From contig CBFFRP010000034.1 in the NCBI GenBank assembly GCA_965644295.1, positions 1 through 64,000 on the forward strand: a DNA stretch of 64,000 nucleotides. The letters are read 5' to 3'. This document shows positions 2,128 through 53,975 of the stretch, one piece after another. The position numbers were made by a program, and so were the translations under genes. Numbering within the stretch: position 1 is the first letter of the stretch; each line of letters opens with the position of its first letter. The stretch comes from Paraphysomonas bandaiensis. Its lineage: Eukaryota; Protista; Chrysophyceae. The notes below the pieces were generated by a model. It was not told the DNA's origin, made no database searches, and saw nothing but the letters and a program-made list of their open reading frames with translations.

Positions 2128-2515
2128 TGTAATCTTTCTGATGAGAAAGACCGTGTTTACAACGTTTTATATGAATTTAAAGTGCTTCCCAAACCGAGAA
2201 TACACTGTCCAGAACACCAAACCGGTGAAACTGCCTCCTAACACAAGCAAACCGCGAGTATAGAATGAATTAAATTACGTTAAAACGTGTAAAGAAAAAA
2301 GTGAAATCATACAACACTCTATCTTGCTGTGAATCATCTACAGTTTACAGTATCATACTTGTACATATACGGGACTTATATCCCTTCAAGAATACAGTAA
2401 CCGCAATGTATACTAAATAAACTGAAAATGAAAGTACAACAGCATGCTACCTAGAGTACCGCAGTATAACACCGTATAACTCCACGTATAACAGTAACTA
2501 CAGGTATGCGTGACA
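2128..2515 (-). repeat. 5' LTR of copy A (388 bp, TGT...ACA)
   Basis: Matches the LTRs at 31032-31420 and 36220-36608 apart from a pyrimidine tract. Confidence 0.95.
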
Positions 2516-4940
2516 CAGGAAGATATACATGGTATCCTACCTTCTCATCAGAGTAACCCATTAAATATCCAACTAGAGCCTTATCCTCCCAATCCTTTCG
2601 TCGATCCGCCTTCGGTGAAAGAACATAAGTTCGACACCCCCATACCCTAAGATATCTCAAATTTGGAGGCTCACCCGTTAGAAACTCTATAGGAGACATA
2701 TACCCTTTATCTGTTTTCGTTGGCAATCGAATCAAAATATATCTGGCTGCCATGTATGCATCCAGCCAAAATTGCGGTGGCAGTCCAGATTGGATTAGCA
2801 TTGCAAGAGTCATCTCTCCAGCAGTTCTGAACTTCCTCTCCTCTATGGCATTCATTTCTGGAGAGTCTGTTGAGCTCCACGTATGTTGATAGCACCCCTG
2901 TGTCCTAAGATACTGACGCAGCTCTTCACTGATTAACTCTCTTGCACCATCTGCATGATAGTGCTCCATCTTGAGCTTGTACCTTCTAACATCTCCTCTA
3001 AATAGCTCTTTGAAGACTTCTAAGACCGCTTCCCCAGTTCTGTGGACTAAACCCGTCGCCCAGAACATTTTGCTGGCATGATGCGTTATCTTTAACACAT
3101 ACCTCTCACCTCCTCTAGCAGGACAATTTAAGTACACAGCAATATCTGCTGAAAAATTCGGTCTAACGGAATTCTCGTCCTTCGTTCGGAAGCTGACTCG
3201 GGTTATTTTAGACCTGGCACACACATCACACAAACACTGATTTTTGTGTACCTTGGCTGTGAGGTGTTTCCGTTTCAACCCTGTACCCATGATGAGCATC
3301 CTCTTATGTGCCTCTACTAAAGCATGTTTGTTGAAGTGACCCGCTCTCCGATGCAGCAACTCCAGCTCGTCCTCACCAGTCCTATCGCTAAGATTTACTT
3401 CACAATTACTCGGTGTAGACACATCTGGAAGCTCCAACAGCTGCTGAGTTGGAACTGCAGTCATTCCATTCTTCATGGGTCCCTCCAGTACCAGCTCACC
3501 GGTATTACAGTCATAAATTTGGATCCCATACCACACCGTGAATCGATAGCCCATTTCGTTCAGCTTACGTCCGGAGCACAGGCATCGATTGATCTGATCT
3601 GAAATTTCAATGTCTCTCCATGCTCCACGGGAACCCACACTTGTAATATGAATCTCTGATCCCTTCTTAGAGCCGTTTATCACCTTTGATGTATTCATAT
3701 GAGTGTCAAGCATGGTCACATCATTCATCAAGAACATTGATGATGAACAGCAGGTGTCAATATATGTATAATGCATGTCATCATTTACACTACATATATT
3801 CGTTTCATGTATATTGCATGACAATTTCATAACATCCTCGATCATATTTGCTTCATCTTCATCAGAGAAATCTGCTGGTTCTCCACGCCGTATATTCTCT
3901 ACTGTCAGCAGCCTTTTGTCCGGCTTCCTACCATGATTCTTCCCTTTCTCTCCTCTTCTAGAATGCTTTTTCTTCGTCGTTGGACAATCAGCAGCAAGAT
4001 GTTCCAGAGACTTGCAATTTCTGCATCCCGTGTATTCAGCACTTCCAGGACGCTGCCCTGATATCTCTCCATCCTTCTTCCTCTGCTTCCTCCTGCACTG
4101 TTCAGTTGAATGGCTATGAGGAATTCCTTCTTTCCTGCAATATCTACAGTTGCCCTTCTTACGCTTATCCCGTTCCGTTCGAGACCGTTTGCTCTTTTCA
4201 ATGAAATTCAGCTCCTCCACCTTCTTGCGTTTCCGCTCTAACGCAATCCTTCCAGGAATGGTATCATCATACCGTTCTATCTTCCTTGATAATGTTGCAT
4301 AATCAACATCATCAGGCATCAAATACAAAGCAACATTCAGAGGAGCATATTCTTCATTCAACAGACCTTCTCGTAACCGTGTTATTTTTGAGAGCTCCGA
4401 TATGTCCTGCTGCTGCTCCTGTAGCTCTTTCAGCAGTATTTCAAACCGTATTATATAGTCCTTCGCAGTCTCCTCCGGACGCATACGGAAAGAGCCATAC
4501 TGAGTCAACAGCTCGCTGATCTTGTTTTGCTTCCCTCCAGCAAAGCACTTCTTCAACTCATCAATCATAATATGCGCCTTAAACCTGTTGCTTCCTCTTC
4601 CATCAGCCTTGAACCCTTTATGTAAAAGATGGAATTTCTGAAGCGCCTTCGAAGATGATTGCACTGCCTCTCTACAGTACGAATACGCTATGGCATTCGC
4701 CTTCCAGTACTTCTTCACAGCCTGTCTGTAAGACTTCTCCTCCATTAACGTGAGTGGCTGTTCCCCGAAGTCGCTCTCCTTCGGTGGTGGCTCCACCGCT
4801 ACTTCACTTTGCTCTTTCCTCATGAGGAACGTTTCGAAGTCTTCAATCCATTGTTCAACATTGCTCTCATTAAACTGTGGCACTACTCCTCTATCCTCCT
4901 TCTCTCCTCCTCGCTCGCTACCATGTTGAGAAACGCTCAT
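2516..4940 (-). mobile_element. Ty1/Copia gag-pol ORF (Gag, zinc knuckles, protease, integrase, SH3), interrupted at 2515 by the Gypsy-derived element before RT
   Basis: CRNCKSLEHLAADC knuckle; YIDTCCS protease-like site; LLHRRAGH...CDVCARSK pre-integrase zinc motif; SADIA/HADGARE/NAIEERKFRT DDE core; NLRYLRVWGCRTYV...GYLMGYS...GYHVY SH3. Domain order PR-IN is Copia-type. The last 21 aa of the 2451..4940 ORF come from the inserted LTR. Confidence 0.93.
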
Positions 4941-11755: not shown

Positions 11756-14700
11756 ATGGGCAATGTACTTGATGTACCAAAATCAACCGGTGATCTTCAT
11801 GCTGAAGATCTAAGCTGGTTAAGTGTCCCAAACTCTGCTATATTCAATGACTCCTATGTTGCTGAGACATATGAAAGTTTACCACCATTTAAAGGCACAG
11901 AAATATCTCAGGTTGAGTGTGATATATGTATATGTATATATAATGATGTGGTTAGGAGGATGAGGTGGTTACAGAGAATGATGAGGAGAAATCAAGCATA
12001 AGAATTAAGCGATTAGTTGAAATATTTTCAAAATCAAAGAATGCTGTTACATATGTAGAAAATTTTGAGGTTGATATGTTAGTATTGATAATTATTATTT
12101 TTGATAGATATTTGTGATAGGAGTTGTCGTGTGCCAAGGAGCTAGAGAATTCCCCATTTGCCCAGAGCAATAAGATGCGTTCTAGATTACTGCAGAGAAT
12201 CCACTTGGCTATGCTTCGCTCTGCTACAAGGTCGCCAATGTCGTCTGGAGGGTCTACTAGTGAAACCTTTGTACGTTCACTGCAGTGTGACAACTTCGAT
12301 GACGCGGATGGACTACTCACTGCGACCTCGATCCGTATGTCGCTAGCTATAATGCAGTGCCTTGCCCCAACAAGTGTGGTTTCTTTTTTCGTTAAATGAA
12401 CTACCAGATGACTAACGTATACCGCAGATCCACCTTTGTTTAAATCGATGTCGGCATCGATCATGGACTTGCTGTCGCGATCATCCAGCCTTGGCTTGGC
12501 TTCGGTTGAGGATTCCTCGCCACAAGGAGAAGGACTGCGGGCCATTATCGAATTCGCCCAGGAGACTGCGTCACAGAGCAGTGGTATTGTTTTTATTAAC
12601 TTTAAAATGTTGGCGTTATTTCTGATATGCAGCAAATCGCAGTGATGCCCTGGCCCTGCTCCTAGCTGTTGCCGTCACGTCTGGATCACTCAGTGGCCTC
12701 ATTGCCGTTGTCTCTAACCTTAAGCGAGGGTCCGATCGCCTCCCCACTTCTGTAACCCCTTTTATGCAACGCTTGGAGCAGCGTGAGACCACCTTGGATC
12801 TGTCTATTCCAATGGAGGATACGATTTCTGGCGATATTAATGTGAAAATGGTGTTTGACTTTCCAGATGCGGACAAACGCAAGTGTGAAGCTTCATTTAC
12901 CACCGACGGCACCCACCTGTTCATATGGAATAGTATAAGTTGTGCGATTCACAAGATTGGAACAGGATTTCATGGTACTATAGCGGGTAATGAATACTTG
13001 ACGAATGCTCTGGTTGAGCAGCAGATTCGGGATCGCCTAGGTATGATGGTGTACGAGCCTCAGCCACGGGAAAACTCAAGCGCAGAAACCGCTCCAGAAC
13101 CGGAGTCTGTGGGTGATACTCACTTAGTCCGGGTGATCGATTCTGCACGTCAAATTACAATTGACGAACACCTTGATGTAGATGATTGTCTTTCAGAATT
13201 CTTTGCGCATGAAGAGTTTGATGAGTTATTGAACTTTGTTGGGCCAATTCTCGAGGAGCGTGTGGTATATGTGTTAGAATTCGATCGTTCTATAAGATTT
13301 TTCCGAATTGGAGAACGTGAGTGGATATCTGAAGAAAACCCAGTAAATGATGAATCCGATGTTGATGATGACGATGATGACTTTGACAGCGAGTCGAGAG
13401 TAGTTGGATTCACTCGTGCTGTGGATGTAATTACTAACACCAGTGGAGGACAGGAGGCTGCATCATCGGAGACTATGAATAGAGATGTGGAGGAAACGGA
13501 AAAAATAAAGCCCGCCTGGATTTCATGGGCTCACGGGAAAATATATCTCAGGATGTGCTATCTGTTAGGCCCGTTTCGAATCGCTGTATTCTCTGCCAGT
13601 GCTCTCAAGTTGGAAGATATCATTGACTTGGACCTGCCCGTTCCTTTATTAATTAAAACCAAGCGGTCATGGTTGAAGAAAATGGCAGTACAGCTGCGAG
13701 AGGGTATGCTTGTAGATATAGAAGAAAGCAAAGAGGATATTGTACATCATGACGAGAAGTTGTGTGATGCGTTGGATGCGGTGGATATTGACCTCAACAT
13801 GCTTGAAGAAGACGAGGGGGAAAAAGAGATATGGGAAGACGGCGAGCAAGTTGATCTACTTCACTCAGTGCTTGTAGGAAATGAAGATTTCTCAAGGCCA
13901 TCTATTGCCACAGCCTCATCTAACTTCATGTCCTCTGGTGGTGAGCAAGAAAGGAACCTTTTGGCGGCGGATGACGAGTGGAACATTGAGTCATCCTTTC
14001 AGTTCGGGCCCGGTGATACGAACCAAGAAATTATTTTGGACATGGGGGGGCAATTCAGAGTGACGGAAATCGGGGCTTCATTTGACATCCCCGATGGTAG
14101 TCACAGCTTTGAGGTGCATGTATCTTCTGATGGGAATAGTTACGAGTTGTTCGGCTCTATTATTCCTTCTACGGTACCTGCAATGTTGCACTATTCTCAG
14201 TCGGATGAACAGCAAGATAGCATAAGCACGCTGCCAAATGTACGATATATCCGATACACTTTTGGTGGGCATTCGCCTGATGGAAATGGGTTAGTAATTC
14301 ACCGATTGTATGTACGAGGCCCGAATAAGGTCCGGAAAGACTTTGTCCCACCGTTTCCGGTCATGACTTCTGATGGTAGAAACCTTATATTCCTTCATAT
14401 GGACAAGCGGTGCATCTTAGGCGATGGTGGAAATGAGGAAGAACACATACTGCAGTCATTTGTATTTGATCCCTGTGTTGGCATGAAGGCAAATCAATGC
14501 AAGCAAACAGATTACAAGTGGGGACTTTCTGGCGGGGAAAATGAGCTTCAACAATGTTCATTTTTGTTTAATAGCAGCAATTTAATTGTTTCCCACACAA
14601 AAAAATTTGCGAGGATTAGCAAGGATGATAAGCAAACAACTTTCTGCTTTTGGAAATTCGACACTGCCAACGGAAAATTATTGTCGTCTACAGAATGCAA

Positions 14701-17700
14701 TTTCAGTAAATCGAAAGGATACCCATGTTCTTTGTCGTATGATTCCCGTAACAACATGATATGGGCATGGAATTGGGCAGATGTCATGTGTCTGCGATGG
14801 CGCAACAATGGACTAGCACCACGATTCGATCCTCCGAAACCCATATCTGCTCGCGAGCTTTTGCTATCTACCTCACCACATCACCGCCTGGAAGCGCTTT
14901 ACTCTATTCCAGAGGAACAACGTGATTCTGCTTACGAGGCTTCTTTTATCATGTGCCAACTAGATCGTCTGGCACTTTTGTATAGTCCTCCTCGTGAATC
15001 TGTGGCAGAAGCGAAGAAGTTTAATGAACTGGAGGTTCAATCGGCTGGTGCTGATGATGGAAATTTTTGTAAGCTTCTTGTTCGAGGTCAAGTACATGGC
15101 AGCTACGGACGGGGATTTAATATATTAGTTCTGGACAATCATTTTGTTCCGAAAGATTTCAGAAATTTTGATACACATGATAATATGAGTGCTTCTGAAC
15201 GGATGGCTGATTTTGTTGATACAATTCCGGAAAATAGACTTGTTCTTGTTGCCACTATGGACACAGCAGTGAACAATCTGACGTCACGTGGAAAGGCTTC
15301 GCTACGAAGTCTCGGTGCTGGCAGTCATATCGAGAGGCTCCCTTGTAAAGGCTCGTTTGCGATGATTGGGCGGAAAGGTGCTTCGCCATCTGAAGTGGTG
15401 CAACAGGTAGCAGATAGGAAGGCTGGAGCAGTAGTAGTACGGCAACGGATGCCCTCGCCTAAAGTACCACTTGCTGTCGAATGTTCTTCTCCTGCGATTC
15501 ATGGGCTCGTGGAACTTGTACGGAACCACCACGAACTAATTAAAAAGAGTGTAGCATCGCCGATGGATGTTCTTCTGCTCATCTCCTCGATGCGACTGCT
15601 TTCTACCAATGTGCATCAGCTACTGTGTGGCTCTTCTATAAGTGATGCCACAAGAGTATTTGATGTAAATGACCGAAAAATCATTGTTAAGATTGTAAAT
15701 GATTTCATTGACCAGCCTCCTGCTGTGGAGGGTGGAGCTGTTATTGCCGAGACTGCGTTGCAATTGTACATCACGTCTATTGATGTGTTGTACCCCTCTC
15801 CGAATGAAAAATGCTCTCTTCTGGTGAAGTACCTCGATGAATTTGTGAACGGAACTTTGTCAGACCTTGAGGGTTCAGTATTGGAGCTTCTATTGAGACA
15901 AATGTCCGATGCCACGTCTCTCGGAAAGTTGTTTGAGCATACTGAAGGATCAGCAGTCGCTAACCCAGATCAGCTTTTGTCTTCTCTGCTATCTATATCG
16001 AAGGTGGAAACACTCTCCAGGCTGAAGGCTGTGTCCAAGGTCGACTCTGTTTCTACTACCCTGGGAAATGGAGTGGCTGGTGTCGGAAACGCTGCGGTTC
16101 TTATGTTGGCCACACTTTGCAATATGATTCTCAGTAAATGTGCACAGACCATAATTGTTTCCGATGACAAGGACCTTGTTGAAATTAATGCAAACAGTAT
16201 AATGTCGCTCATTTCGAATATTGCTGATAGCAGCTCAATTATTTTACAGGCAGGCTTCGAAACGAATCGTTCTTTATGTGGGCTACACGATAACAGCAAT
16301 AGTATGGTTTTGGATGATGAAATAGATGAAATACTCAAATTGTCATTTGTTGGGGAACTTTTACCTACCGTTCTTCATGCCTCTGGGCTACTCTTTGAAT
16401 CACATGGATCAAAATTGACTTCACACTTTTCTGACACCTTTTCAGAGAGTCTGACATCTTGTCTGAAAGACGTTCACTCTCTTCTTGCAACAGTTCCAAA
16501 AATTAAGCTTCAGCCGCAAGGTGCAACTGAATCAGGTGTCCGAACCAGCACCCATACGTATGAGTCTGCCCATCCATACCTGCCAAACACAGATGAAAAA
16601 TTTGAGTTGAACTTTCCTAATGCGATTCGCATGACAATAGCATTCGATCAGGATACGAGGACAGAGAACAACTATGATTACGTTCGAATTTGGAAAGACT
16701 CTAGCAAGACGGAGTCTTGCCACCCGGGCATTGACAAATTGACGGGAAGGAATGGTTCAGAGAATTGGCCTGGTCAAGGTGACCGTCCTCCTCTTGTAAT
16801 AGAAGGGGGTGAGTGTTATGTGGAATGGCACAGTGATAGTAGTAACGAAGATTGGGGATGGCGATTCAATGTTGTAGTGGAGTTCAGGAGGCGTGCGTCG
16901 ACGCAATCCCACTGGCTAGTTGATATAGAAAAGCAAATATGTTTTTGCGGTGCTGAAGCAGCAACCAGTATGATTATTAGCACGCCATGGAATAAAGAAA
17001 AAGAAGACCGCAATGCTTTCTGGATGGAAGATAGCTTGTTGGACTTCGGATTTTTGGAGGAAAGCGAGGTTGACATGGAGAACGATGAGGAAGCACAATT
17101 TCTCAATGACTTCGAAATTCGACCATCAGGATCCCTTGCCTCTGCCTTATGTAAAATAATGAAAACTCATGTTCGAGAAGATCAGGGACAGGTGGAAGAT
17201 ATTAACTGTGCAGTCTATGCTACATGCGCGGCTTTGCTTAAGCATAACAATCTTGTCGCCGAAGCGCTTGCTCTGGCGAAAGATAATAGACAAAAACCGT
17301 CTGATCTATTGATCAAAGTGTGGACCACCGGACAAAAGATGAAAACTTTCTTTGCATTTGGTGATGTGCGCGATGCATCCAAGGCTGAAGCGAACGATCC
17401 TGATTTGGATGATCTACCTCCTCCACCAACAATGGAGCGGGGTCCGTCAATATACAGCGGAGCGGATGCCGAGGTGGTTCGAAAGACATCCGAAGAAGTT
17501 GTAAAACGCGCCAAGTTTCTTCTCAGAGTAAATTCTTCTTCAAAAGCTGCAGCAGTCGCGAAAGAAAGTGCAAAACGAAAATGGGAACTGCTCAGTAAAT
17601 CTGTCATACATAGAGGGCGTTCTCGAGATGAATCTGACGGTGACATTGGTGGAAAATGGCACGCACTCGTTGGTGAAGTTCATGCTGCATACAAGCTAAA

Positions 17701-20700
17701 AGGTATGCTCACTCATATGCGTAAAGAGGCCTCCCTTCGCAAGGGAGGTGCAGCACTGACGACTACCGAAAAAGTGCTACGTTTTGTGCAAGGAAGGGTA
17801 AATGTGGCTGATCTTGAGAGCATCCGTACTCTTCGTAATGCGAGAGCCCATGTTCGATCTTGTGGTTTTGACATGATATCAAGACTTATCGAGGCAGCTA
17901 TTTCTCCGTTTGCGATTAAATGGTTGATGTGTACCCTGTCGAACGCTATACGATCCAGTAAAAGACCAGATTGTGCCAAGCCTGGTGTGCATTATCTAAA
18001 CACCATTGAGGGGTGTTCAAATGCAGAGCGTGGGGCAGTAATCAAATCGTTTTGTGGCATTGTAGAGAAATGTGTGAATATGATGGGTATAGCCTACGCG
18101 AATAGCAATAAAAATGAGTTGACGGAACATGAGAGAAACGAATGGCGAAGTGCAACCATCAGCTGTATTCGCGCACTAGCCATTGATTATAACCTCCTCG
18201 ACCACAGTATATTAGATAGTTGTAATATTCTCGCGGAACTTCAGTACTTTTTACAGGCTAGTGAATTTGATGTTCAGCGCACCGGATGGAGTTTGTTCGA
18301 ACTCTTGCTTCCTCGTTGTGTTGGTTTAGAAGGGCATCGCCATGGCTCAAATTCTATTTCAGATGAGCCCACAGACTTTAGCAAAAAGCTCGTGGCAATG
18401 CTTGTCAATCAACTTGACCGTGCCGCCTGCCGAATATCCGCACTCCCTACTCCAGAGAATACTGATTTGGCTCTTGCTCTAGGCGGTAACTCTGTTATTC
18501 CCGGCGTAGTTTCGTTGCGAAGAGATAGTTTGGGGTATTGCGCTCCCCACCAGCCACTCGGTCTGTATCATACGTTTTCCTTTTGGATGAAGCGAAAGAA
18601 GTGTGCAATGGATAGCGCTTTTGAATCTGGGGAGATTGCCGAAGGGTATAAAGTCTTTCGTGGTCCAAATTGGAGGAAAGGAAACATTGACGATGGTGGA
18701 GACGGGTGTTTGGGTACGGTTGTAAAAGTAGATGGCGACAAAGTCACAGTAAAGTGGGAAAATAAAATACAAGCGAAGTACAAGTTTGGAGCGATTGAAG
18801 ATGGCGAGAAAGTATATGAGGTTTCTGTTGTAGATACCACAGTAGGTGGGCATATATTATCGAAGGGTATGAATGCGTTATTAAGCGAAGATGATGCGGC
18901 TGATGTGTGGTCTACATTTGGAATATGTTTAAGGCCAAATGCTACCTTGAAAATGTTCGCTGCCTCCGGCGGTGACGACTTTTACGGAAGTGTGGGGAAA
19001 AATATAATTCCTGCCGAAGAATGGACGCATGTAGCAGTTGTACAAGACAAAGATAAAAATAAAATATATATTAACGGCACAATGGATTGCGAGAATACAA
19101 TTCCAGGCCATATGCTCTATCCAGGCAAGGGATCGAGAAATGTTGTGGTAGTGGAGAGCCCTCACCCATATAGAGACAACACTGAGCTATATACTGTTAT
19201 TCAGGAAGAAGGAGCCGTCAGCTACACTATAACGTTTGATCCACGCACCAGAACAGAGAGCAATTATGACTATATTCGATTCTACAAGAATGACAGTCAC
19301 AGTGATTACTGGGGGGAACAAAAGTATACGGGCGGCCGCGGGGGGTCTTCATCAAACTGGCCTGGATTCAATGGACGTCCGCCTCTTGTCATACCAGCCG
19401 CAAGATTTATTATCTACTTCAAGACCGACTGTAGCAACAATGATTGGGGGTATAAGATGAATATTTCTGTTGAGAAGCTCGAAGTTGTTGATGATGAAAG
19501 AGATATAATCGATACACTCAATGACAAACCTATATATATTGGGCAAATGCCGTCATATGTGAATAACCTTCCTAATTTGCCGAACTCTTTTGATGGGCTC
19601 ATTGGTGGCCTCAGCGTGTACCCACGGGTTTTATCAGGCGATGAGATTGCATCATTAGCCACTCATACACCTGAATCACCAACCGATTCTGGCGATGAGG
19701 TTCTTTGTCTTGATGTGTTATCTATGATGGATCGATCCTGCCAAGCGTTGAAGGGCATTAGTGCGACAATGTCCAATGCATTCCCTGGGCCAAATGTTGT
19801 TTATCCACTTTTGTGTATTGTCTCAAAAGGTACTGCATTTGTTCAGTCATCTGCTCTGCGTGTCTGTGCCACGTTGCTTCCAGTTTGTCCGATTGAGCTG
19901 GTAAATGTGCAGGCCACGCGTGCAGGTCTGAGCAAGAACGGTAGCTTTTTGAATTTTATACTCAATCGAGTTGGACAAACAATGAACGTGTGGTCGCGAT
20001 ACTCCGTCCAGCCCCCAGAAGCCCGACTGTGCAACGAATTGGAGTTTAGTATTGGGATGGAGTATTTGAATCTACTGAATGCTTTGGCAGTTTCTGAAGA
20101 ATGGGGCAGCACGATATTGTCTACTGTTGATGAGATTATATCGACAACTTCTCCGGCAACGATAGCGAGCATTAAAAAATGTACTGAGAAGGAAACAGCA
20201 CTAGGTAAATCTTCCTCGAACATTGAGGTTCAAGATGAGGACTTAAACTTGGTGTTTTCTATTCTGGGGCTTCTTGGTGGAACGCTCAGTGGACTTTATG
20301 CAGGTGCAAAGGCACGATATGCTACAGGGGATGACAATGGTATCATGGAGGAATGTACTGTCCTGGCATCAACGTGGCCTCCAGACCCATCGTCTTTCAA
20401 TGACAAAGTCGACGCTGCAATGTGGAAAGATATGACATCATTTGGTGATGCATTTGTGATTGTCCTCAATTCTCAGCCCGGCGAATCTTTAGTTGTTCCT
20501 AGAAATAAGCTGAGTGTTTCATCAACTCCATTCTGCAAAGATATGAGCAGTTTTCTGTCGAAGTTATCGGGATCTTTAGTTAACCTCTTCTCTGTAATTT
20601 GTAACATTGATGCAACTGACAAGCGACCTGTACATATTCCGAAAATTAAGGAGTCAGATGAATGTCATGAGTTTGAAAGCCCTCACCCTTATCCAGATAA

Positions 20701-23700
20701 TTCAGAGGTGTACAAAGAAATTAAGTTCCCAGGTGCAAAAAGTATTATAATTGAGTTCGATAGGCGCACAAGGACAGAACCATCATGTGACTATGTACGC
20801 TTCTATAAGGACAATAATCATAGAGATTATTTTGGCGATGAAAAATATCACGGAAGGGATAACGAGCAGAATTGGCCAGGAGTTGCGGGTAGACCACCAT
20901 TAGTGATACCTGGGGATTCATGTGTCTTGTACTTTCATTCCGATGGATCGAATAACGATTGGGGCTATAAATTCACTGCCAAGGCGCACTGCATAGTAAA
21001 GACTTTCCCCCCTCCTCGTCCGCCATTGCTGCATAATGCACTGATTGCTCACGTTAAACTACTTGGTGTCAACGCTCTCCACACTTTACTTAAGGAATTT
21101 TCGTGGTTTAGTTTATCCTGTATGCCTATCATGTCCAGTTTGCTCTCGGCTGCACTCTCTCCTCTCCCTGTCAGCAAAGTTGGTCCCGTTGCAACGAAAC
21201 CTTTGGTTTTTGAATCTAAACACCCTTACGACCATAACTTGGATGACTACATACCTGTGAGAATAGCAGGTGCAAAGAAATTAATCGTCACATTTGATGA
21301 CCAAACGGCTACAGAAAACAGTTGCGATTACATGAGGCTTTATAAAGACGACTCCAAGAGTGAGTATTGGGGTGAGAACCAGTACACTGGTGGTAAAGAC
21401 GGGGGAAGTTGTAATTGGCCTGGTATTCAAGACAGACCGCCTCTTATTATACCATCGGATTCATTCATCATATATTTTCACACAGATAGCTCTGTAAATG
21501 CATGGGGTTGGAAAATGTTTGTGAGTGCTGCCGTGGATGAATCTGGAGGCTCCACGCCTGAAATGGACACTGGACTCTGTTTGTACCGGGCCCAGTGTTG
21601 CCAAATGGTGCTAAGAGATTGTCCTGCACGTCAGCCCGAACCAGAAGGTCTCGATGAATTTGAAGTAGAGACTCCAAGTGCAGGTGAGCTACTGCTCCTT
21701 GACATATCGAATGAAATAGTCGAAGATGCTGCTTATTCCACTGCCGTCGAGGCGGATGATACACCACCCGTCACCCCTTTGGATAGAATAAAGTGTAATA
21801 TGGACACCATTATGAATGTAAGAGCTCGTGGTGGTGCTTTGTGGCCGAGAGACTTTAAAATGAACCCGAAAGACACTACTCAAGTGATCATTCGCTCAGA
21901 CACAGCTGATGAAGCTGATATTGTGACTGTAGTTACTGGTGGCTGTGTGTTGACTGCTGAAGGTGAACATGGAGACTGGTTGCGCGTGAAAGCTACTGAA
22001 AATGATGACGTGAAGGAGGGGTGGGCACGTCGCCGCGTTGGAGATCTTCAGTACCTGTTGCCGGTAGTAGATGGAAGCGTGAATGAATCTCTCGAATCTG
22101 ATGATATTATCATTCTTCCTAGCGAAGACGATTCCAGTGGTATTGGATCACGCCACTCCATGTACGATGTCGACGAGAGTACCCTCAGTTCAGTTTATGG
22201 GAAGCATGACATTCAGCCCACTCCTTTGGAGTTGCTGCAGCCATGTGCAGACTGCATTGAGCGAACTGCAGCAGACATGTGCCAAATTGGGGCTGTATGT
22301 GTGGCTCAGGACTGTGTTTCCAGAATTGTTTCTATATGGCCAGACGACATACCGTTCACCATGCAGTCTTTCGGCAACACAGGAAGACTTTTGGCTTATA
22401 TTCGCGCGGCTTTTATACGAGAAAGTTCTATGGGCAGTGGGACTTTTTCGGGGCCCAATTCTGCTCTTGGCGTCCTCAAAAATCGAATATTAGAAGTTGT
22501 GCGCAAGGAATCTGAGGGAACTGAAGTATCTGATGACCCGCCGTTGGCTGACACTGTTATGAAATATGCAGTGAAGCAGCTCGCAGAAAGCTTGCGACTG
22601 GAAACTGCCTTGCGCCCAGTTCGAGCTAAAGTGAAAACCTTGGAATGCAAACACCCGTACGATGACAACATGGATGAGTATTGGGACCTCAGTATTCCAG
22701 GTGCTAAGTGGATGAAAATTGTTTTTGATAAGCGGACATCAACTGAAAAGGACTGTGATTATCTCACAGTGTACCATGACCAGTCAAGAACCCAAACTTA
22801 TGGGCCAAGGTATACTGGGCGTGCGTCCGGTAATGACAAAACGTGGCCAGGTCTTGGTAGTACCCCGCCACTTATAATTCCTGCGGACAGCTGCGTTGTG
22901 CACTTTCACAGCGATTCGTCTAATGTCGACTGGGGGTTTCTGTTGAGGTGCTATGGAATTATAGATGAACCTACTGAAGAGGAGAAAGAGAAGGTGAAGG
23001 CTGAAAAGACTTCTCCAAATGCCCCTATTCCAGAACTTGCTTGTTGGTTGCTTGAGTTCCTCGCCAAAGAACCTGTGGAAGGTGTGTACCGTATTCTATA
23101 CGCACCTTCAACTATTGCAACTCTCCGGCGATATGTTGAAATTATGCCAACAGAGAAAAAGCTATTCGCAGTGAATCTCCTTACCAATATGGTACAAGAA
23201 ATTACTCGTGTGCCAGTTACTCAAGAAACCGTCGATGAAATTTTCCTCCTCAAGAAGGTTATTGTGGATCTTTCTAGCAAGCAGCATGCACTTGAAGCAG
23301 CCGGTGGAGGTAGCCCAAACGAAGTATCACAGCTCTTACAGGCGCTGATCCAAGCTGCAATTGTGTTAGATTCAAGCGTCGCAAGCCTGCAAGTGGACAG
23401 GAGTTCCATTGAAGTCTTTTCGTCGCCCAAGAAAAGAGGAGATGTTGACGGAACATCGGTTAATGAGAGCAAAGAGGAAAAGATATTGTACGAACACAAA
23501 GACAACGATGATATGGTTGAGCATGTGGGATGGAATTCGGATGCATTAGGAAAGAACTTGGAATTGGCAGATTCAAATAGAACTGTTCGCCGACGTCCGT
23601 TTGTGGTTTCAGGTGAGTACACGAGTGCTCTGTGCAACGGAGGGTTTCAGAGCGGCACTCACACCTCTCATGTGAAGTTGAACTTCATTAGTGGTGCTGG

Positions 23701-26700
23701 ACCAATAGTTGGGGTAGCTGTTCGTAATTATACTGTTGACAAACCAATCGGGGATACTGGTGAGTTGTTCAGCATTGGTTGGGGCTCACAGAAGTTGCAT
23801 GTTTCTTGCAGAGACGACCCCATTCCTTTTGGACCCAAATTTTCAATTGGAGATGTGATATCTGTTGAAGTTGACCGCTCTCGTATGACAGTGACATTTT
23901 TTCGCAACCATGCCATTGTTGGAATCGCTGTTGGACCTACAGGCTCGGGTGCTGTTGTGGAGATGCCTCTACCTAGTGATCAACCACTGCATCTGGCAGT
24001 CAGTCTAGGAAATACTGGGGACTCTCTGCAGTATGTAGAATCTATACCGCCTGTAATTGCACCTATCACCACAGTCTCAGCGCTGACATCAGCATCATCA
24101 GACATGCCGGACTGGTTTCTTCCAATCAGAGAAGCGGTTATGCTGTTGCGCTCGTGCTCAGCACGTGAACTGCCGGCGTCCGTATTTAGCCGTGAATTTG
24201 TCCCTATGTGTGAGGAAAAGGCCCAGGTTGTAATAGAGAGTACACATCCATTCAATTCTGCGCCGTTACAGAGAACCATTGTCATTCCTGGCGCAGAGAG
24301 TCTTACAGTGCGGTTTGACAGTGCGACGAAGATGGGGACGAGAGATATCATCCGGATTCAGGGACCACTCATTAGGGGAGAGCGACAGAAATTTGAGTAC
24401 ACTGGATTAGTTGGGGGCTCCGTTGTTTCCAAATCTGCTGTTAACACAATTTCTGTTTCTGACAAAGTGGTTCGGGGTCCGACATGGGACTGGGGTGATC
24501 AAGACGGCGGCCCAGGCTCTTACGGTGAAGTATTAGAAGTCACAACGTGGAAAGGGAAACCGAATGCAGGCGTCACGGTCAAATGGAAAGACACCGACTT
24601 TGTTGGTTTATATAGATGGGACTTTGAGGGATTCTTTGATTTGTTGGTGGTAGGTCAGTCGGAAAAGTCTATGAACCCCCTTAATATTAGCGGAGACACT
24701 CTTGATATTGAAGTTCAACCTAGTTGTGATGAGTCAAGTACATTACGGATCCCAAAGGTGGAGTGGGCTGGTGCTCTTTATTTTAATGGCACATCATCTC
24801 ATATAGAGATCCCGTCTTCAAACGATATTGAGTTAACTAGTGATCTAACTGTGGAAGCGTGGATTAAAGTGGCAACCAATATTCCGTCTACAGTCGATTT
24901 CCTTCCTGTCTTGACACGTCAGATAGAATTGGATGGGATAAAATCCCAGTTCAGTCTACAATTGGGGTTTCCTGGTGAGTGTGGAACAAATACATTGGTT
25001 ATGCATGCAACGAACGTAGAAATACAGCCCGCAATCCACGTCCACGGTGGAAACATTACTCCGGGACTGTGGACACATATAGCTTGTGTGGTTATGGGAT
25101 CTGTATCTGCCCTATTTGTGAATGGTACGCTAGTTGGCTCAACAAACACTATCACAGGAACTAGACTAGGTGCTTTGGGTGCACCTTTATATGTTGGCAA
25201 GTCAGCCGACAGCCGGTTTTTCAAGGGTAATATTTACGATATTCGCATTTTCAACATTGGTCGCTCCATTGATGTTATTCAGGCGGAAAAAGGCACACCA
25301 CCTGCAGCTGATACACCAGGTCTGATATCTCATCTTGGCACCCACCAATCATCTGTGACCGATTTAGTATTCGATGCAGTTAGATCAGAAACTCCGTTGG
25401 CTGCGCCAGATGTCATGTGGGACTCGGCCGTTGAACCCAACGTTCTTCCAGCTGGCGCGAACTATGGGTACAAGTGCATCGTTACTCCAACGTTCTCGCT
25501 GAACACTGTCCTGCACAGTGATATGTTCCAGGACATTTTGCATAGCCTTCAGAACCAGTACACAGTTGGCGAATTCCGCCATGACCTCGCACTGGTGCGA
25601 TACATTAACCAAGTCAGTCGTGCGAGGAAGATTAATATAGCTCAGTTGCTTGTATGCAAATGGTCAGATATTGCCCCCACAGAGGGAGAATTGTCCAGTA
25701 TGCCTCTTCTTAAGGACCTCATACACATGGTTGACTCACGGGTATCTCTTCATGGTGGAGAAGAGGAATCGAAGAACTCGACCGACGGTCACAATATGCC
25801 TATGTGTGCACCACCGGTGCATACACCCACTGAAGGTTCTGAGACGGTTTTGCGTCCAATTGAAGCGCGCTTTAAGCTCCTCCAGCTTCTCAACAAGGCA
25901 CTTTCTACTACTGTTCCTTTCTTTGACTTGTGCACTGTAGATAAGCCTTGGAGCGTTGCGAGTTTGCTCTCCGCTTGTCGCGGACTTGTATTTGAAGCCA
26001 CCAAGCAACCTATATGGGACGCCGGTATGGCCGCAACAAATTGCTCCAACTCCTCCACATTTGATCTCAAATTATCACGATCTCGAGCTGCCAAATTTCA
26101 CCGGACTGGTCAAGTTGACAACGAGGGTCGTTGGATGGTCTTTTCGCAGGCATTCCGAGTACTACACACAATGCCCCCTAGCGCTCTTCGGCGAAGTGAT
26201 AAAGTGTACAATTGCACTTTCATGGGGGAGAGGGCCCATGATGCAGGTGGGCCTTATCGTGAGTCGTACGCAATGATGGCGCTGGAGCTGCAAAGTCACG
26301 CATTGCCACTCCTCATCCGTACGCCAAACAGTCGTCATAATGTGGGGCAAAATAGAGAAAAATGGGTCTTAAACCCGGGGGCTACGAGCTCACTTCATAT
26401 GGATATGTTCTGTTTTCTTGGAAAACTTATGGGCATTGCTGTTCGTACGAAGGAATACCTGGCGTTGGACATACCGTCAATTATATGGAAACTCCTTGTC
26501 AATGAAACGCCTACTCGTGAGGATCTTGAGGGAATTGATCTATTCAAAGTACAGTCACTTGATAAAATGAGAAACATTCATTTGCACCAAGTGGATGCAA
26601 GTACATTCAGTAGTGTTTTCTACGAGACATTCACGACTGTAACAACTGACGCGCGAACTGTTGAACTCCTTCCGGGGGGAGCAGAGAAAGATTTGACGTT

Positions 26701-27253
26701 TGAAAATCGTGATTACTACTGTGACTTAATCGAGCACTATCGACTGCACGAATTTGATGCCCAGGCCGCTGCTGTGCGCCGAGGTCTAGCTGCAATGCTT
26801 CCTTACCGCCTGTTGTCGCTATTTACATGGGACCAGTTAGAGGAGATGGTCTGTGGAAGGCCAATTATTGATGTCGCTCTGTTACGATCTGTGACAGAGT
26901 ATTCCTCGTGCTCTTCGACTGATGAGCACGTTCAGTACTTCTGGCAAGCGATGGAGGAGTTTACTAACGAAGAGCGATCAATATTTATTCGGTTTACGTG
27001 GGGGAGGTCCAGACTTCCACTCACTGCGGACGCCTTCCCTCAGCGGTTCAAGCTGCAGAGCTTTGGGAAGAGTCCACCAGATGCATACCTTCCGGTCGCA
27101 CATACTTGCTTCTTTAGTCTCGAATTGCCGCGATACAGTACGCTGGAAATAATGAAAGAAAAACTTAGGTATGCAATTTTCAACTGCCAGGCGATAGATG
27201 GAGACGATACCAGTGTTGGTATGCAGGCTGCCTCTATGGGGTGGGAGGACTAA
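11756..27253 (+). CDS. Giant HECT-type E3 ubiquitin ligase (~5,000 aa) with discoidin-like, ILEI/PANDER, ~6 CUB-like, 2 MIB/HERC2, 2 LamG/ConA-like, SH3-like, SPRY and HECT domains
   Basis: 4,829-codon ORF with HECT motifs FMGERAHDAGGPYRE and LPVAHTCFFSLELPRYS (catalytic Cys at 27107-27109) and MIB/HERC2 VVRGPTWDWGDQDGG. About four small 5' exons start at MGNVLD (11756). Intron 12584-12632 joins in frame to the final exon 12633-27253. Confidence 0.93.
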
Positions 27254-51713: not shown

Positions 51714-52278
51714 TGTATAGAGTGTAATTGTGATAAGTCAGTACGTTTGATAAGTAGGAGTGTATAATAAGATGCATCATTCGCAAGATATAAACCACGT
51801 AATAGTGTTCCTTGAATAGTATATTGAAGGTTATCTGACAACATACAGACATGTCCATATTATATCTCATATCCTAACCTCTCATGCGTCACTATTGCAT
51901 ACCAACACCATTCCCTCTTCATCGATTTCCAGTTCTTAAGTATGTCATCTGCTGTTACCAGAACTCTCCTCTTCCCCGTTAGTAGAATGAACTGTGCGAT
52001 GTTACCAGGATAAACGGTCGGTTGCCCGGAAGAGATAACCCGGATATACTCTGCCGGGTTGTTGGTTGTTGTACAAGGTTCAACTATACGGATATAATCT
52101 TACCCGTATCCCGGATATATGTAGCCGGTTATTTTATGGCAGATGGTGGACATGATATGCTCCTGTCCATATATATATATATATATACACAGATGCATCC
52201 ATACAACATGCAGCCATGTTGCAACATAGCATTCAACTTAAACTTCTATATGGAATAAAAACAACACCTATTGCAATT

Positions 52279-53975
52279 ATGGAACAAATACAAGATTTTA
52301 CACCTACTCTTAATAAACCTACTGCATCAGGGCAACTAGAACCCCTTCAAGATGCTATTTCAACTGATTTTGAGGGAATATTAGATGAAATGCGCACAGA
52401 GATTGCAACATCTCAAGAAATTAACACACAAGTATATAAAACTCGATTAATATTTCATTAATCTTATATTGATGGGTAGGTTAATGACAGTCTGAGATTG
52501 TCTTCCAATGCTCTGTTCTCTGTTAAGACGGGCGATATTGCCAGTGGACAGGAATCCATTCAGTCAAGCATAACAATATTATCAAACGTATGTATCTCTC
52601 TCATATTGTATGTACTCTTACTAATCTAGATACAAATATGTCCCTTTAGATTTTAAATAAACATTCCAACGCACGAATTGTAAACAGCAGATTTGGGATC
52701 GCTGTGCAGAGTGCTTTGGAAGTTTTGCTTCTTTTGGAATTCTTCGAGCATGGAAGACTTCTCAACATAAACGAAGTAACTCTTTGTACAGATGAGGAGT
52801 ATGTTGGGGCTACTCTTGGTCTTGCATCGGAAATATCGCGTTATTGCGTTACTAGAGCGTGTGAGGTAATCGTCGAACTTTTGTTCAGTGCTATCTCTTA
52901 GTGCAATATCAACAGAACGACCACACATCTGTATTACTATGTAGGGCATTTCTGAATGCGGTAAACGGAAAGATGCTGGAATTTTATTTTCGCAATGGTC
53001 CACTGCGTCGCATGTACGATGGCCTAAAATATGCCTACAAGCGTGTCGAGGATATTATTTTCGATATGAGTATGCTCTGCCCACCAGGTATATTTCGTAG
53101 CAGCATATACAATTTACGAAGTCGATGTATTTACAGCTAAGTATGTAGTGGAGAAAGATAAGTTAGAGCCTGAAACTAAGCGAGCACGTACATCGGGTGC
53201 ATTTGATTTACAGCTGTTTGACTCTCGTGTGTTTTTCGATTCCGAACAACTTGATTCAGTCAAGAGCCGAATGGATGCCTACGATCTCATGAGGGAGACT
53301 GTAATTAAGAAGTCAAGAGACATTCAGAAGTTCTCGAAACAGGCTGTGTTTTCTTTGCACGGTATGAGGAAGGAGGAGGCTAAAAATAAGCTTTCTAAGG
53401 CTCAAGAAATTGCCTTGGAGATACTACCTATTATCACCGACGTAAGAAATTATCTCAATGTGCCATACCGTTAACTAATTCAGCACGAATTATTTGTGTA
53501 ATATGTATAACAGTACCCGACTTTAAGATCTGGATCATTCAGTAACTCTCTCGAAGAGTGGGCGGAAGCACGACTGTTTTTAGAATGGGTGCAACGACAG
53601 GCGGTACTACGAAGGAGTGAATTAGGAGAAGCCCTAGGGCAGCCACTCACTTGTGGAGAGTATATTGGCGCTCTGTCTGATCTGACTGGAGAATTGGGGC
53701 GGGTTGCCGTTGCAGAAGCCTCCAAGCGAAATGTTGAGGCTGTCAGATCAATACATGTTGTCAGTCTGACAATCTCGCGAGCACTGTCGGATCCTACTGT
53801 AACCGGAAAGTTTAACCAGAAGCAGAAAGCTGTGGTCAATAACACGAACAAAGTAGAAGGGCTTATATACGAATTGAGTATGGTACAAAGGGGTGGTCGT
53901 CGGGTTGTAGAGGAATCTCGTGATGGTACTAGCTCAAGCAAGCAAAAGGTAGTAGATGACGAAGATGATGTGTGA
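52279..53975 (+). CDS. Tandem Translin-family protein: translin-like N-terminal domain and TRAX-like C-terminal domain
   Basis: Domain 1: EEYVGATLGLASEISRY and RNGPLRRMYDGLKY...VEDIIFDMS. Domain 2: RETVIKKSRDI, SLEEWAEA, EYIGALSDLTGELGR. Joined in frame by phase-1 intron 53088-53148. Confidence 0.85.

What the first reader, a model, noticed from the sequence alone, without database searches (positions are those of the whole stretch)
52279..53975. Apparent single-chain Translin-TRAX (C3PO) fusion gene
Seen: two translin-family domains in one spliced frame. Intron 53088-53148 has GT..AG ends, a CTAA branch motif and phase 1 (CCA G|TG GAG), and leaves no room for a second promoter. Domain 1 resembles non-catalytic translin (GLASEISRY vs human ILASELSRL; LRRMYDGLKY vs LRKRYDGLKY; QSALE lacks the first catalytic Glu). 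Domain 2 carries the full TRAX acidic set (E..E at 53556/53565; D...E at 53679/53691). Known: animal and fungal C3PO is built from two genes into a translin-rich octamer (about 6:2) acting in RISC activation and pre-miRNA/tRNA processing, while archaeal C3PO is a homo-octamer. Inference: fusion would fix a 1:1 ratio (e.g. a tetramer of fused chains), a third C3PO architecture. I know of no description of this but cannot check the literature.
Basis: partly seen in the sequence, partly recalled or inferred. Interest (0 to 1): 0.8.

Follow-up and report, generated by a model that had tools for sequence, protein, structure and literature searches.

The report
Single-chain translin-TRAX (C3PO-like) nuclease gene
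This alga encodes both halves of the RNA-cutting complex C3PO (a translin-like half and a catalytic TRAX-like half) in one protein chain, and the same fused design, which I found described in no paper, occurs in many marine protists.

Summary
A six-exon gene at 52279-53975 (+) gives a 467-residue protein. It has an N-terminal translin-type domain without the full catalytic tetrad, a roughly 32-residue linker carrying a basic KRAR motif, and a C-terminal TRAX-type domain with the complete E..E / D...E set.

No RNA reads could be obtained, so the splice across 53088-53148 is inferred. Three results support it:
- The model aligns end to end (40-47% identity, E about 1e-110) with more than 70 two-domain proteins of 420-560 residues.
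- Some of these are uninterrupted intronless ORFs (including Nitzschia inconspicua), and some are complete transcriptome ORFs.
- The closest relative reads through the junction in one frame. Another has an intron at the same site and phase.

This is the only translin-superfamily locus in the 62.6 Mb assembly.

The two halves have congruent trees, which suggests one old fusion. It occurs in chrysophytes, diatoms, diplonemids, Telonema, a dinoflagellate and a prasinophyte.

Two points stay open: whether the halves are true orthologues of animal translin and TRAX, and whether intron retention also yields free translin.

I found no published description. The 1:1 ratio itself is not new, because full-length Drosophila C3PO is 4:4. 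I class it as a new variant of a known kind.

The parts
52279..53975 (+). Whole gene, from ATG to the TGA stop (53973-75). Six exons give a 467-residue product. An in-frame upstream ATG at 52216 is a possible alternative start.
   Evidence: End-to-end alignment with fused homologues.
52279..52431 (+). Exon 1 (residues 1-51), the N-terminus and start of helix 1 of domain 1.
   Evidence: The N-terminal segment aligns with the family's LPxxP...FGxxLQ block.
52432..52479 (+). Intron 1: 48 nt, GTATAT..TAG, phase 0, with in-frame stops.
   Evidence: The alignment shows no gap at this junction.
52480..52587 (+). Exon 2 (residues 52-87).
52588..52649 (+). Intron 2: 62 nt, GTATGT..TAG, with a TACTAAT branch-like motif.
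52650..52865 (+). Exon 3 (residues 88-159), the middle of domain 1. It contains QSALE (52707-21) and LASEISRY (52821-44).
   Evidence: Pfam PF01997 positions 78-144, E 1.2e-4. Domain-1 profile 54.6 bits.
52866..52915 (+). Intron 3: 50 nt, GTAATC..CAG. The same position is used in relative L007.
52916..53087 (+). Exon 4 (residues 160-216), the C-terminal helices of domain 1 with the translin signature FRNGPLRRMYDGLKY (RRMYDGLKY at 53006-32).
   Evidence: phmmer against PDB hits only translin chains, E 5e-6. Domain-1 profile 78.3 bits.
53088..53148 (+). Intron 4, in the inter-domain linker: 61 nt, GTATAT..TAG, phase 1. Retention gives a TAA stop at 53138-40. An alternative acceptor at 53135-36 also keeps the frame.
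   Evidence: L007 has an intron at the same site and phase. L006 has no intron here and is one open frame.
53149..53441 (+). Exon 5 (residues 217-314): the linker with basic KRAR (53178-89, NLS-like) and helix 1 of domain 2.
   Evidence: Pfam positions 3-43. Basic motif present in 68 of 79 linkers. Stand-alone-type profile 68.9 bits.
53442..53513 (+). Intron 5: 72 nt, GTAAGA..CAG, phase 0, three in-frame TAA. The same position is used in L007.
53514..53975 (+). Exon 6 (residues 315-467), the catalytic core of domain 2 and an acidic tail.
   Evidence: Pfam PF01997 51.2 bits, E 2e-13. 417 relatives found.
53550..53570 (+). LEEWAEA motif. Catalytic Glu codons at 53556-58 and 53565-67.
   Evidence: Invariant in 79 of 79 family members. 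Aligns with the metal-binding ELvEa of AfTRAX.
53676..53702 (+). SDLTGELGR motif. Catalytic Asp codon at 53679-81 and Glu codon at 53691-93.
   Evidence: Invariant in 79 of 79. Aligns with DavGE of AfTRAX and DiaGE of NEQ131.

Best explanation
One spliced mRNA from 52279-53975 encodes a 467-residue single-chain C3PO-like protein.
- The N-terminal half is a translin-type seven-helix domain. It lacks two of the four metal-binding acidic residues and is predicted to be a non-catalytic scaffold and nucleic-acid-binding half.
- A disordered linker of about 32 residues carries a basic KRAR motif, probably a nuclear localisation signal.
- The C-terminal half is a TRAX-type domain with the complete Glu-Glu-Asp-Glu site. 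It is predicted to be a Mg2+/Mn2+-dependent endoribonuclease.

Inferred steps: the two halves pack against each other as the translin-TRAX heterodimer does. Four chains then close into the hollow octamer-equivalent particle with four active sites facing the cavity. That particle cuts single-stranded RNA, such as small-RNA passenger fragments or tRNA and pre-miRNA processing substrates.

Shown here: gene structure, domain identities, fold, conservation of the catalytic residues, family-wide fusion, and absence of any other translin-superfamily gene in the assembly. Inferred: splicing of intron 4 in this organism, intramolecular pairing, oligomer, enzyme activity, substrate and nuclear targeting.
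For: Gene model and fusion:
- The gene model has five GT..AG introns of 48-72 nt.
- The joined model aligns over residues about 9-465 with more than 70 two-domain proteins of 420-560 aa, at 40-47% identity and E about 1e-110. The linker aligns too.
- 68 of the top 150 cluster representatives (50% identity clusters) hit by exon 6 are at least 380 aa. Most of those were listed with two matched stretches, the better one in the C-terminal half. Pfam finds two Translin stretches in all eight fused-length (at least 384 aa) homologues tested.
- L002 (457 codons) and L005 (Nitzschia inconspicua, 460 codons) are uninterrupted ORFs.
- Trinity and MMETSP 'complete' ORFs exist from Biecheleria, Telonema, Lacrimia and others.
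- The closest relative, L006, covers model residues 159-449 in one frame at 52% identity. L007 has introns at the sites of window introns 3, 4 and 5, and its linker intron shares the site and phase, 'CCA G|GT'.

Domain identities:
- The domain-1 profile scores 72 bits against translin and 20 against human TRAX.
- The domain-2 profile scores 63 against AfTRAX, 61 against NEQ131 and 58 against human TRAX, but 32-41 against translins.
- The AF2 model of homologue P0173 has pLDDT 90 and pTM 0.84 with a disordered linker. Its residues 28-218 match translin structures at Z about 20-21, and residues 262-453 match archaeal C3PO at Z about 20.
- The catalytic E, E, D, E are invariant in domain 2 in 79 of 79 members. 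In domain 1 the first-Glu position is Glu in 3 of 79 and the Asp position is Asp in 2 of 79. The window has Ser and Gly there.

Genome context:
- Only this locus matches Pfam Translin, the domain-1 profile or the stand-alone-type profile in the 62.6 Mb assembly.
- Argonaute/Piwi genes are present.
Against: - There is no transcript evidence for this genome.
- Each domain-1 exon scores below Pfam's gathering cut-off on its own (22.5 and 15.6 bits against 25.9). The joined model was not sent to Pfam.
- The structure model is of a homologue 42% identical to the window protein, not of the window protein. Its inter-domain geometry could not be superposed on a solved heterodimer.
- No biochemical data exist for any family member.
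Confidence: 0.85

Rival explanations
1. Two adjacent but separate genes. A translin gene would end at the TAA at 53138-40, and a TRAX gene would be translated from ATG 53271. The 'intron' would be an intergenic spacer.
For: Reading through 53088-53148 gives an in-frame stop. An ATG exists at 53271 just before the conserved MDAYD block. No RNA data were obtained.
Against: - Only about 130 nt separate that stop from that ATG, whereas flanking intergenic gaps are about 565 and 890 nt.
- The stretch 53149-53270 aligns with the conserved linker and the start of helix 1 of fused homologues, including the KRxR motif. It has no in-frame ATG.
- Orthologues are uninterrupted single ORFs.
- The intron's site and phase are conserved in L007.
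Confidence: 0.04
2. Fusion plus regulated intron retention. The linker intron is kept because leaving it unspliced ends translation 17 codons later and yields free translin. The cell could then tune the translin:TRAX ratio above 1:1, as in translin-rich animal C3PO.
For: - The stop at 53138-40 lies shortly after the translin domain.
- An intron at the same site and phase occurs in a relative about 47% identical (L007), and it also carries an early in-frame stop.
- Another first-stage note on the same stretch raised this idea.
Against: - Every intron of this gene contains in-frame stops or shifts the frame, so the stop is not special.
- Many family members have no intron in the linker at all (L002, L005, L006), so the mechanism cannot be general.
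- No expression data were obtained.
Confidence: 0.15
3. The two halves are not orthologues of animal translin and TRAX. An ancestral-type single gene, like the stand-alone protist proteins that carry both the catalytic tetrad and the translin-like C-terminal motif, duplicated in tandem and fused. The copies then split the roles, repeating the translin/TRAX division of labour convergently.
For: - Stand-alone proteins of oomycetes, trebouxiophytes and Pavlova have LEEYAEA and DFTGEL together with FDFRNGSLRKKYDALKY. They score about equally against TRAX, archaeal C3PO and translin.
- Domain 2 shares their N-terminal and catalytic blocks. Domain 1 shares their C-terminal block.
- The AU test does not reject domain 1 plus domain 2 as one clade (p = 0.26).
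Against: - In the best rooted tree domain 2 nests among the stand-alone proteins (97/93) and domain 1 lies outside.
- Domain 1 scores higher against canonical translin (72 bits) than the stand-alone profile does (59-67). It scores far lower against TRAX and archaeal proteins (20-38 against 54-77). This points to derived characters shared with translin.
- Translin structures are the best fold matches of domain 1.
Confidence: 0.3

Closest known systems
Eukaryotic C3PO (translin-TRAX complex of human, Drosophila, Neurospora; PDB 3PJA, 3AXJ, 3RIU)
   Same: It has a translin-type non-catalytic partner and a TRAX-type partner carrying the Glu-Glu-Asp-Glu metal site. Both have the same seven-helix fold. 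The TRAX-translin heterodimer is described as the building unit, and full-length Drosophila C3PO as a 4:4 octamer (PMC6144819).
   Different: Here both partners are one polypeptide from one gene, joined by a disordered linker of about 30-45 residues with a basic motif. The stoichiometry is fixed at 1:1, and no separate translin or TRAX gene is detectable in the assembly. Sequence identity to the solved chains is only 17-24%.
Archaeal homo-octameric C3PO (AfTRAX 3ZC0/3ZC1; Nanoarchaeum NEQ131 5JR9/5JRC)
   Same: Domain 2 matches these best by profile (61-63 bits) and by structure (Z about 20 over about 185 residues). It keeps all four metal-binding residues.
   Different: In the archaeal particle every subunit is catalytic and comes from a single-domain gene. 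Here alternate domains (domain 1) lack the tetrad, so at most half of the domains can be active.
Stand-alone single-domain 'translin family' proteins of oomycetes, trebouxiophyte green algae and haptophytes (for example Phytophthora, Saprolegnia, Coccomyxa, Pavlova)
   Same: They are the nearest single-domain kin of domain 2 (36-43% identity; grouped with it at 97/93). They share the linker-proximal LLDxxDF...VIKRSRD...SKQAIFSLHRG block and the catalytic motifs.
   Different: They have one domain of about 220-260 residues that keeps both the catalytic tetrad and the translin-like FDFRNGSLRKKYDALKY motif. They are presumably homo-oligomeric. From memory, and unchecked, these look like the 'single translin superfamily protein with both motif sets' of Gupta, Kale and Kumar, J Mol Evol 2012. 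I could not read that paper.

Membership tests
Translin family (Pfam PF01997), two tandem domains | Two separate matches to the Translin profile on one product. | tested here: met
   Window exons 3 and 4 cover profile positions 78-202, and exons 5 and 6 cover 3-202. Exon 6 alone scores 51.2 bits against the 25.9 cut-off. The domain-1 exons score 22.5 and 15.6 bits singly, but 54.6 and 78.3 bits against the family's own domain-1 profile. All eight fused-length homologues tested have two Pfam stretches. The joined model was not sent to Pfam.
C3PO (translin-TRAX endonuclease) | A TRAX-type subunit with the four metal-binding acidic residues (human E126, E129, D193, E197; Ne E82, E85, D117, E121). 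| tested here: met
   The codons are at 53556, 53565, 53679 and 53691. The residues are invariant in 79 of 79 family members and align with the AfTRAX and NEQ131 motifs.
C3PO (translin-TRAX endonuclease) | A translin-type partner that lacks the catalytic site but keeps the translin C-terminal signature (LRKRYDGLKY). | tested here: met
   Exon 4 hits only translin chains. The domain-1 profile scores 72 bits against translin and 20 against TRAX. The window has Ser and Gly at the first-Glu and Asp positions. The fold match to translin has Z 20-21.
C3PO (translin-TRAX endonuclease) | The halves are orthologous to animal and fungal translin and TRAX respectively. | tested here: inconclusive
   The rooted tree separates domain 1 from domain 2 plus the stand-alone proteins. 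The AU test does not reject a domain 1 plus domain 2 clade (p = 0.26). No canonical translin or TRAX sequences were available to add to the tree.
C3PO (translin-TRAX endonuclease) | Assembly into a hollow hetero-octamer and Mg2+-dependent RNase activity. | not testable with these tools
   There is only a monomer model of a homologue (pTM 0.84). No multimer prediction or assay was available.
Archaeal-type homo-oligomeric C3PO | Every translin-fold domain carries the full catalytic tetrad. | tested here: not met
   Domain 1 lacks two of the four residues in the window and in nearly all relatives.

The most novel reading that the evidence does not exclude
The covalently fused C3PO may be an ancient, vertically inherited architecture shared by several eukaryotic supergroups: ochrophyte stramenopiles, diplonemids, Telonemia, and possibly dinoflagellates and prasinophytes. 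It may have arisen independently of the animal translin/TRAX split, by tandem duplication and fusion of an ancestral-type single gene. That would be a convergent re-invention of a catalytic/non-catalytic pair, and the conserved linker intron would allow optional production of free translin.
Probability: 0.2. Interest if true: 0.75.

Novelty: new variant of a known kind. Interest (0 to 1): 0.55.

Why it matters
C3PO stoichiometry has been disputed, with 6:2, 4:2 and 4:4 all reported. The TRAX-translin heterodimer has been proposed as its building unit (PMC6144819). A natural family in which the two partners are covalently joined, and in which no free partner genes exist, is independent evolutionary support for the 1:1 heterodimer as the functional unit.

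It also offers a chemically homogeneous particle for structural and enzymatic work. It gives the first handle on C3PO-type RNA processing in diatoms, chrysophytes and diplonemids, which have Argonaute genes but no described translin biology.

Together with the stand-alone 'both-motif' proteins of oomycetes and green algae, the family also allows a test of how the catalytic/non-catalytic division of labour in this superfamily arose.

Tried and rejected
- phmmer of exons 3 and 6 against PDB gave nothing. Family profiles were needed.
- Literature: eight full-text searches found no description of a natural translin-TRAX fusion and nothing on translin in diatoms. Two of these were badly posed and uninformative. 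The most relevant paper, Gupta et al. 2012, J Mol Evol, is not held.
- The domain-1 word search found no named stand-alone translins, only fused proteins and fragments. Canonical translin and TRAX could therefore not be added to the trees.
- The protein-atlas search on ORF 2451-4940 returned only Copia retrotransposon clusters and did not identify the organism.
- Recent internal duplication is rejected: the halves are 22% identical and not sisters in the best tree. An ancient duplication is not rejected.
- An alternative genetic code was considered, because introns 1 and 5 are in frame with only TAA/TAG stops. It is rejected because introns 2-4 shift the frame and homologues show no insertions at those sites.
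- It was built only inside local scripts from window.fa, for alignment, BLAST against proteins already fetched, and trees.

Full report
**1. What is in the sequence**

Region 52279-53975 (+) reads as a six-exon gene:
- Exons: 52279-52431, 52480-52587, 52650-52865, 52916-53087, 53149-53441 and 53514-53975.
- Introns: 48, 62, 50, 61 and 72 nt, all GT..AG.
- The gene ends at TGA 53973-75.

Joined inside a local script, the exons give 1404 nt and 467 residues.

This covers the motifs, the phase-1 junction CCA G|TG GAG, the TAA at 53138-40 if intron 4 is kept, and the acidic codons at 53556, 53565, 53679 and 53691.

Pfam's Translin model (PF01997) hits exons 3 and 4 at profile positions 78-202. It then restarts at positions 3-43 in exon 5 and 74-202 in exon 6. 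This is the pattern expected of two tandem domains.

- AG 53135-36 is a second possible acceptor. It also keeps the frame and adds four residues to the linker.
- An in-frame ATG at 52216 could extend the N-terminus by 21 residues.

**2. How the searches were run**

The joined model was never sent to a search tool. It was used only in local scripts, for MAFFT, BLAST against proteins already fetched, and trees.

This report therefore contains no transcript evidence for this genome.

**3. Is it one chain?**

Exon 6 alone, searched against 1.84 billion cluster representatives, found 417 relatives. Of the best 150, 68 are at least 380 residues long. Most of those were listed with two matched stretches, the better one in the C-terminal half. 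Pfam finds two Translin stretches in all eight fused-length homologues tested.

The joined model aligns as a single BLAST segment over residues about 9-465 with more than 70 such proteins of 420-560 residues, at 40-47% identity and E about 1e-110. The N-terminus, both domains and the linker are all collinear.

The architecture does not depend on anyone's splice prediction:
- The genes for P0188 (L002, also found on a TARA scaffold) and for the Nitzschia inconspicua protein P0245 (L005) are uninterrupted ORFs of 457 and 460 codons.
- Several members are 'complete' ORFs of assembled transcriptomes: MMETSP entries, and Trinity contigs of Biecheleria, Telonema and Lacrimia.
- The closest relative I found, metagenome contig L006, covers model residues 159-449 in one open frame at 52% identity. 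It runs straight through the domain junction.
- L007 is a short contig filed under a Symbiodinium microadriaticum assembly, about 47% identical to the window gene. It has frame changes at the sites of window introns 3, 4 and 5. Its linker intron starts at the same codon position and phase, 'CCA G|GT'.

The two-gene alternative fares poorly:
- It would leave about 130 nt between the stop and ATG 53271, whereas the flanking intergenic gaps are about 565 and 890 nt.
- It would also discard a conserved coding stretch (53149-53270) that contains no ATG.

**4. What the halves are**

- *Profiles against PDB.* A profile of thirteen N-terminal halves scores 70-72 bits against translin chains, 28-38 against archaeal C3PO and 20 against human TRAX. 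A profile of the C-terminal halves scores 63 against AfTRAX, 61 against NEQ131 and 58 against human TRAX, but only 32-41 against translins. Window exon 4 by itself hits only translins.
- *Divergence between halves.* The two halves are 22% identical profile to profile.
- *Structure.* An AlphaFold2 model of homologue P0173 (42% identical to the window model, 78-sequence alignment) has mean pLDDT 90 and pTM 0.84, with only the linker (about residues 227-263) disordered. Translin structures superpose on its residues 28-218 (Z 18.7-20.9, rmsd 1.6-1.9 Å). Archaeal C3PO chains superpose on residues 262-453 (Z 19.4-20.0) (Foldseek results).
- *Catalytic residues.* The four metal-binding residues of TRAX-type nucleases are invariant in the C-terminal half of all 79 aligned sequences, the window included. 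In the N-terminal half, the first-Glu position is Glu in 3 of 79 and the Asp position is Asp in 2 of 79. The window has Ser and Gly there.
- *Linker.* The median linker is 31 residues. It carries a K[KR]x[KR]-type basic cluster in 68 of 79 sequences, which is KRAR at 53178-89 in the window. By analogy with the nuclear targeting signal reported in the TRAX N-terminal region (my recollection, unchecked), I read this as an NLS.

**5. Genome context**

Pfam Translin, the domain-1 profile and the stand-alone-type profile each find only this locus in the 62.6 Mb assembly. The fused gene is therefore the only detectable source of either half.

The assembly has Piwi/Argonaute genes and many silicon-transporter genes. 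The latter fits the 'marine diatom' label in other agents' notes. I did not verify that label further.

**6. Distribution and origin**

Named sources of fused proteins:
- Chrysophytes and synurophytes: Spumella, Chlorochromonas/Ochromonas, Epipyxis, Mallomonas, 'Chrysophyte H2'.
- Diatoms: Nitzschia, Coscinodiscus.
- Diplonemids: Lacrimia, Rhynchopus.
- Telonema.
- The dinoflagellate Biecheleria.
- The prasinophyte Cymbomonas.

Some of these transcriptome attributions could be contamination.

Trees of the two halves are congruent. The same diatom clade, the same P0019/P0024 pair and the same 11-member clade appear in both, and the window sequence is the first branch of that clade in both. This suggests one old fusion followed by descent as a unit.

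The window protein does not group with the Nitzschia/Coscinodiscus clade. It is a long branch, so I leave this unexplained.

The nearest single-domain kin of the C-terminal half are stand-alone proteins of 220-260 residues from oomycetes, trebouxiophytes and Pavlova. These keep both the catalytic tetrad and the translin-like FDFRNGSLRKKYDALKY motif. They score about equally against TRAX, archaeal C3PO and translin.

I rooted a careful tree with 17 DPANN-archaeal homologues. It places the C-terminal halves inside these stand-alone proteins (97/93) and the N-terminal halves outside. An AU test does not reject the two halves being one clade (p = 0.26).

The N-terminal half scores higher against canonical translin than the stand-alone profile does, and far lower against TRAX and archaeal proteins. 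I therefore favour a fusion of pre-existing translin-type and TRAX-type paralogues, at roughly 2:1 over an independent duplication and fusion. Canonical translin and TRAX sequences could not be brought into the tree, so this stays open.

**7. Mechanism**

I take the product to be a single-chain C3PO:
- a translin-like scaffold and nucleic-acid-binding half;
- a TRAX-like metal-dependent endoribonuclease half;
- a flexible linker long enough to let the halves pair as the TRAX-translin heterodimer does.

The high pTM supports a fixed mutual arrangement of the halves. I could not superpose the model on a solved heterodimer.

Four chains would give the octamer-equivalent hollow particle with four active sites. 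Likely substrates, by analogy with published C3PO work, are small-RNA passenger fragments, tRNA precursors and pre-miRNAs. Assembly, activity, substrates and localisation are all inferred.

**8. Comparison with what is known, and novelty**

The animal complex is made from two genes. Mo et al. 2018 (PMC6144819) report that the heterodimer buries 4,441 Å2 and is the likely building unit, and that full-length Drosophila C3PO is 4:4. They also find the translin C-terminus and the TRAX N-terminus disordered, which are exactly the ends joined here.

So 1:1 is not a new stoichiometry. A genetically enforced one is new.

Eight full-text searches found no description of a natural fusion and nothing on translin in diatoms. 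The one survey likely to have touched on it, Gupta et al. 2012, is not held. As far as I recall, its abstract refers to single proteins with both motif sets, which fits the stand-alone group rather than the fusion.

The sequences themselves sit in public databases as 'translin family' or hypothetical proteins.

**Verdict:** the gene is real and well supported. It is a new variant of a known kind, belongs to a broad protist family, and is of moderate interest.

Noticed in passing
window 52036-52128 and 52157-52198: The 240 nt upstream of the start codon hold three copies of a CGGATATA-containing motif (52041-52, 52089-100, 52107-28) and a (TA)n tract with flanking inverted arms. They could be promoter elements or a transposon remnant.
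   Followed up: no
window 52216-52278: An in-frame ATG 21 codons upstream of the assumed start. Homologue N-termini fit ATG 52279 better, but 52216 is not excluded.
   Followed up: partly
P0322, P0364, P0310, P0318 and others (alignment A5): Stand-alone proteins of 220-260 residues from oomycetes, trebouxiophyte algae and Pavlova combine the TRAX catalytic tetrad with the translin-like FDFRNGSLRKKYDALKY motif. They look like an ancestral-type, presumably homo-oligomeric eukaryotic C3PO.
   Followed up: partly
L008-L010 (Woesearchaeota MAG contigs): DPANN-archaeal translin-superfamily proteins are up to 49-52% identical to the eukaryotic stand-alone proteins. That is unusually close for an archaeon-eukaryote pair. 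Possible causes are gene transfer, mis-binning or a slowly evolving ancestral form.
   Followed up: no
L007 (contig CAJNJV010023497.1 of a Symbiodinium microadriaticum assembly): This 2.6 kb contig carries the window gene's nearest named relative, with the same intron positions. It is annotated as only a 297-residue product. Its affinity to the window gene rather than to other dinoflagellate sequences suggests a contaminant contig and an incomplete gene model.
   Followed up: partly
window gene versus P0245 / P0087: The genome is rich in silicon transporters and other agents call it a diatom. Even so, its fused protein is only 32-34% identical to those of Nitzschia and Coscinodiscus. It branches at the base of a different clade (chrysophytes, Cymbomonas, Telonema) in both halves. 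Possible causes are long-branch artefact, old paralogy with differential loss, or gene transfer.
   Followed up: partly
window 2451-4940 (-): An 829-residue ORF resembles Copia-type Gag-integrase-Pol polyproteins.
   Followed up: no
window 12764-27253 (+): A single uninterrupted ORF of 4829 residues. I did not examine it.
   Followed up: no
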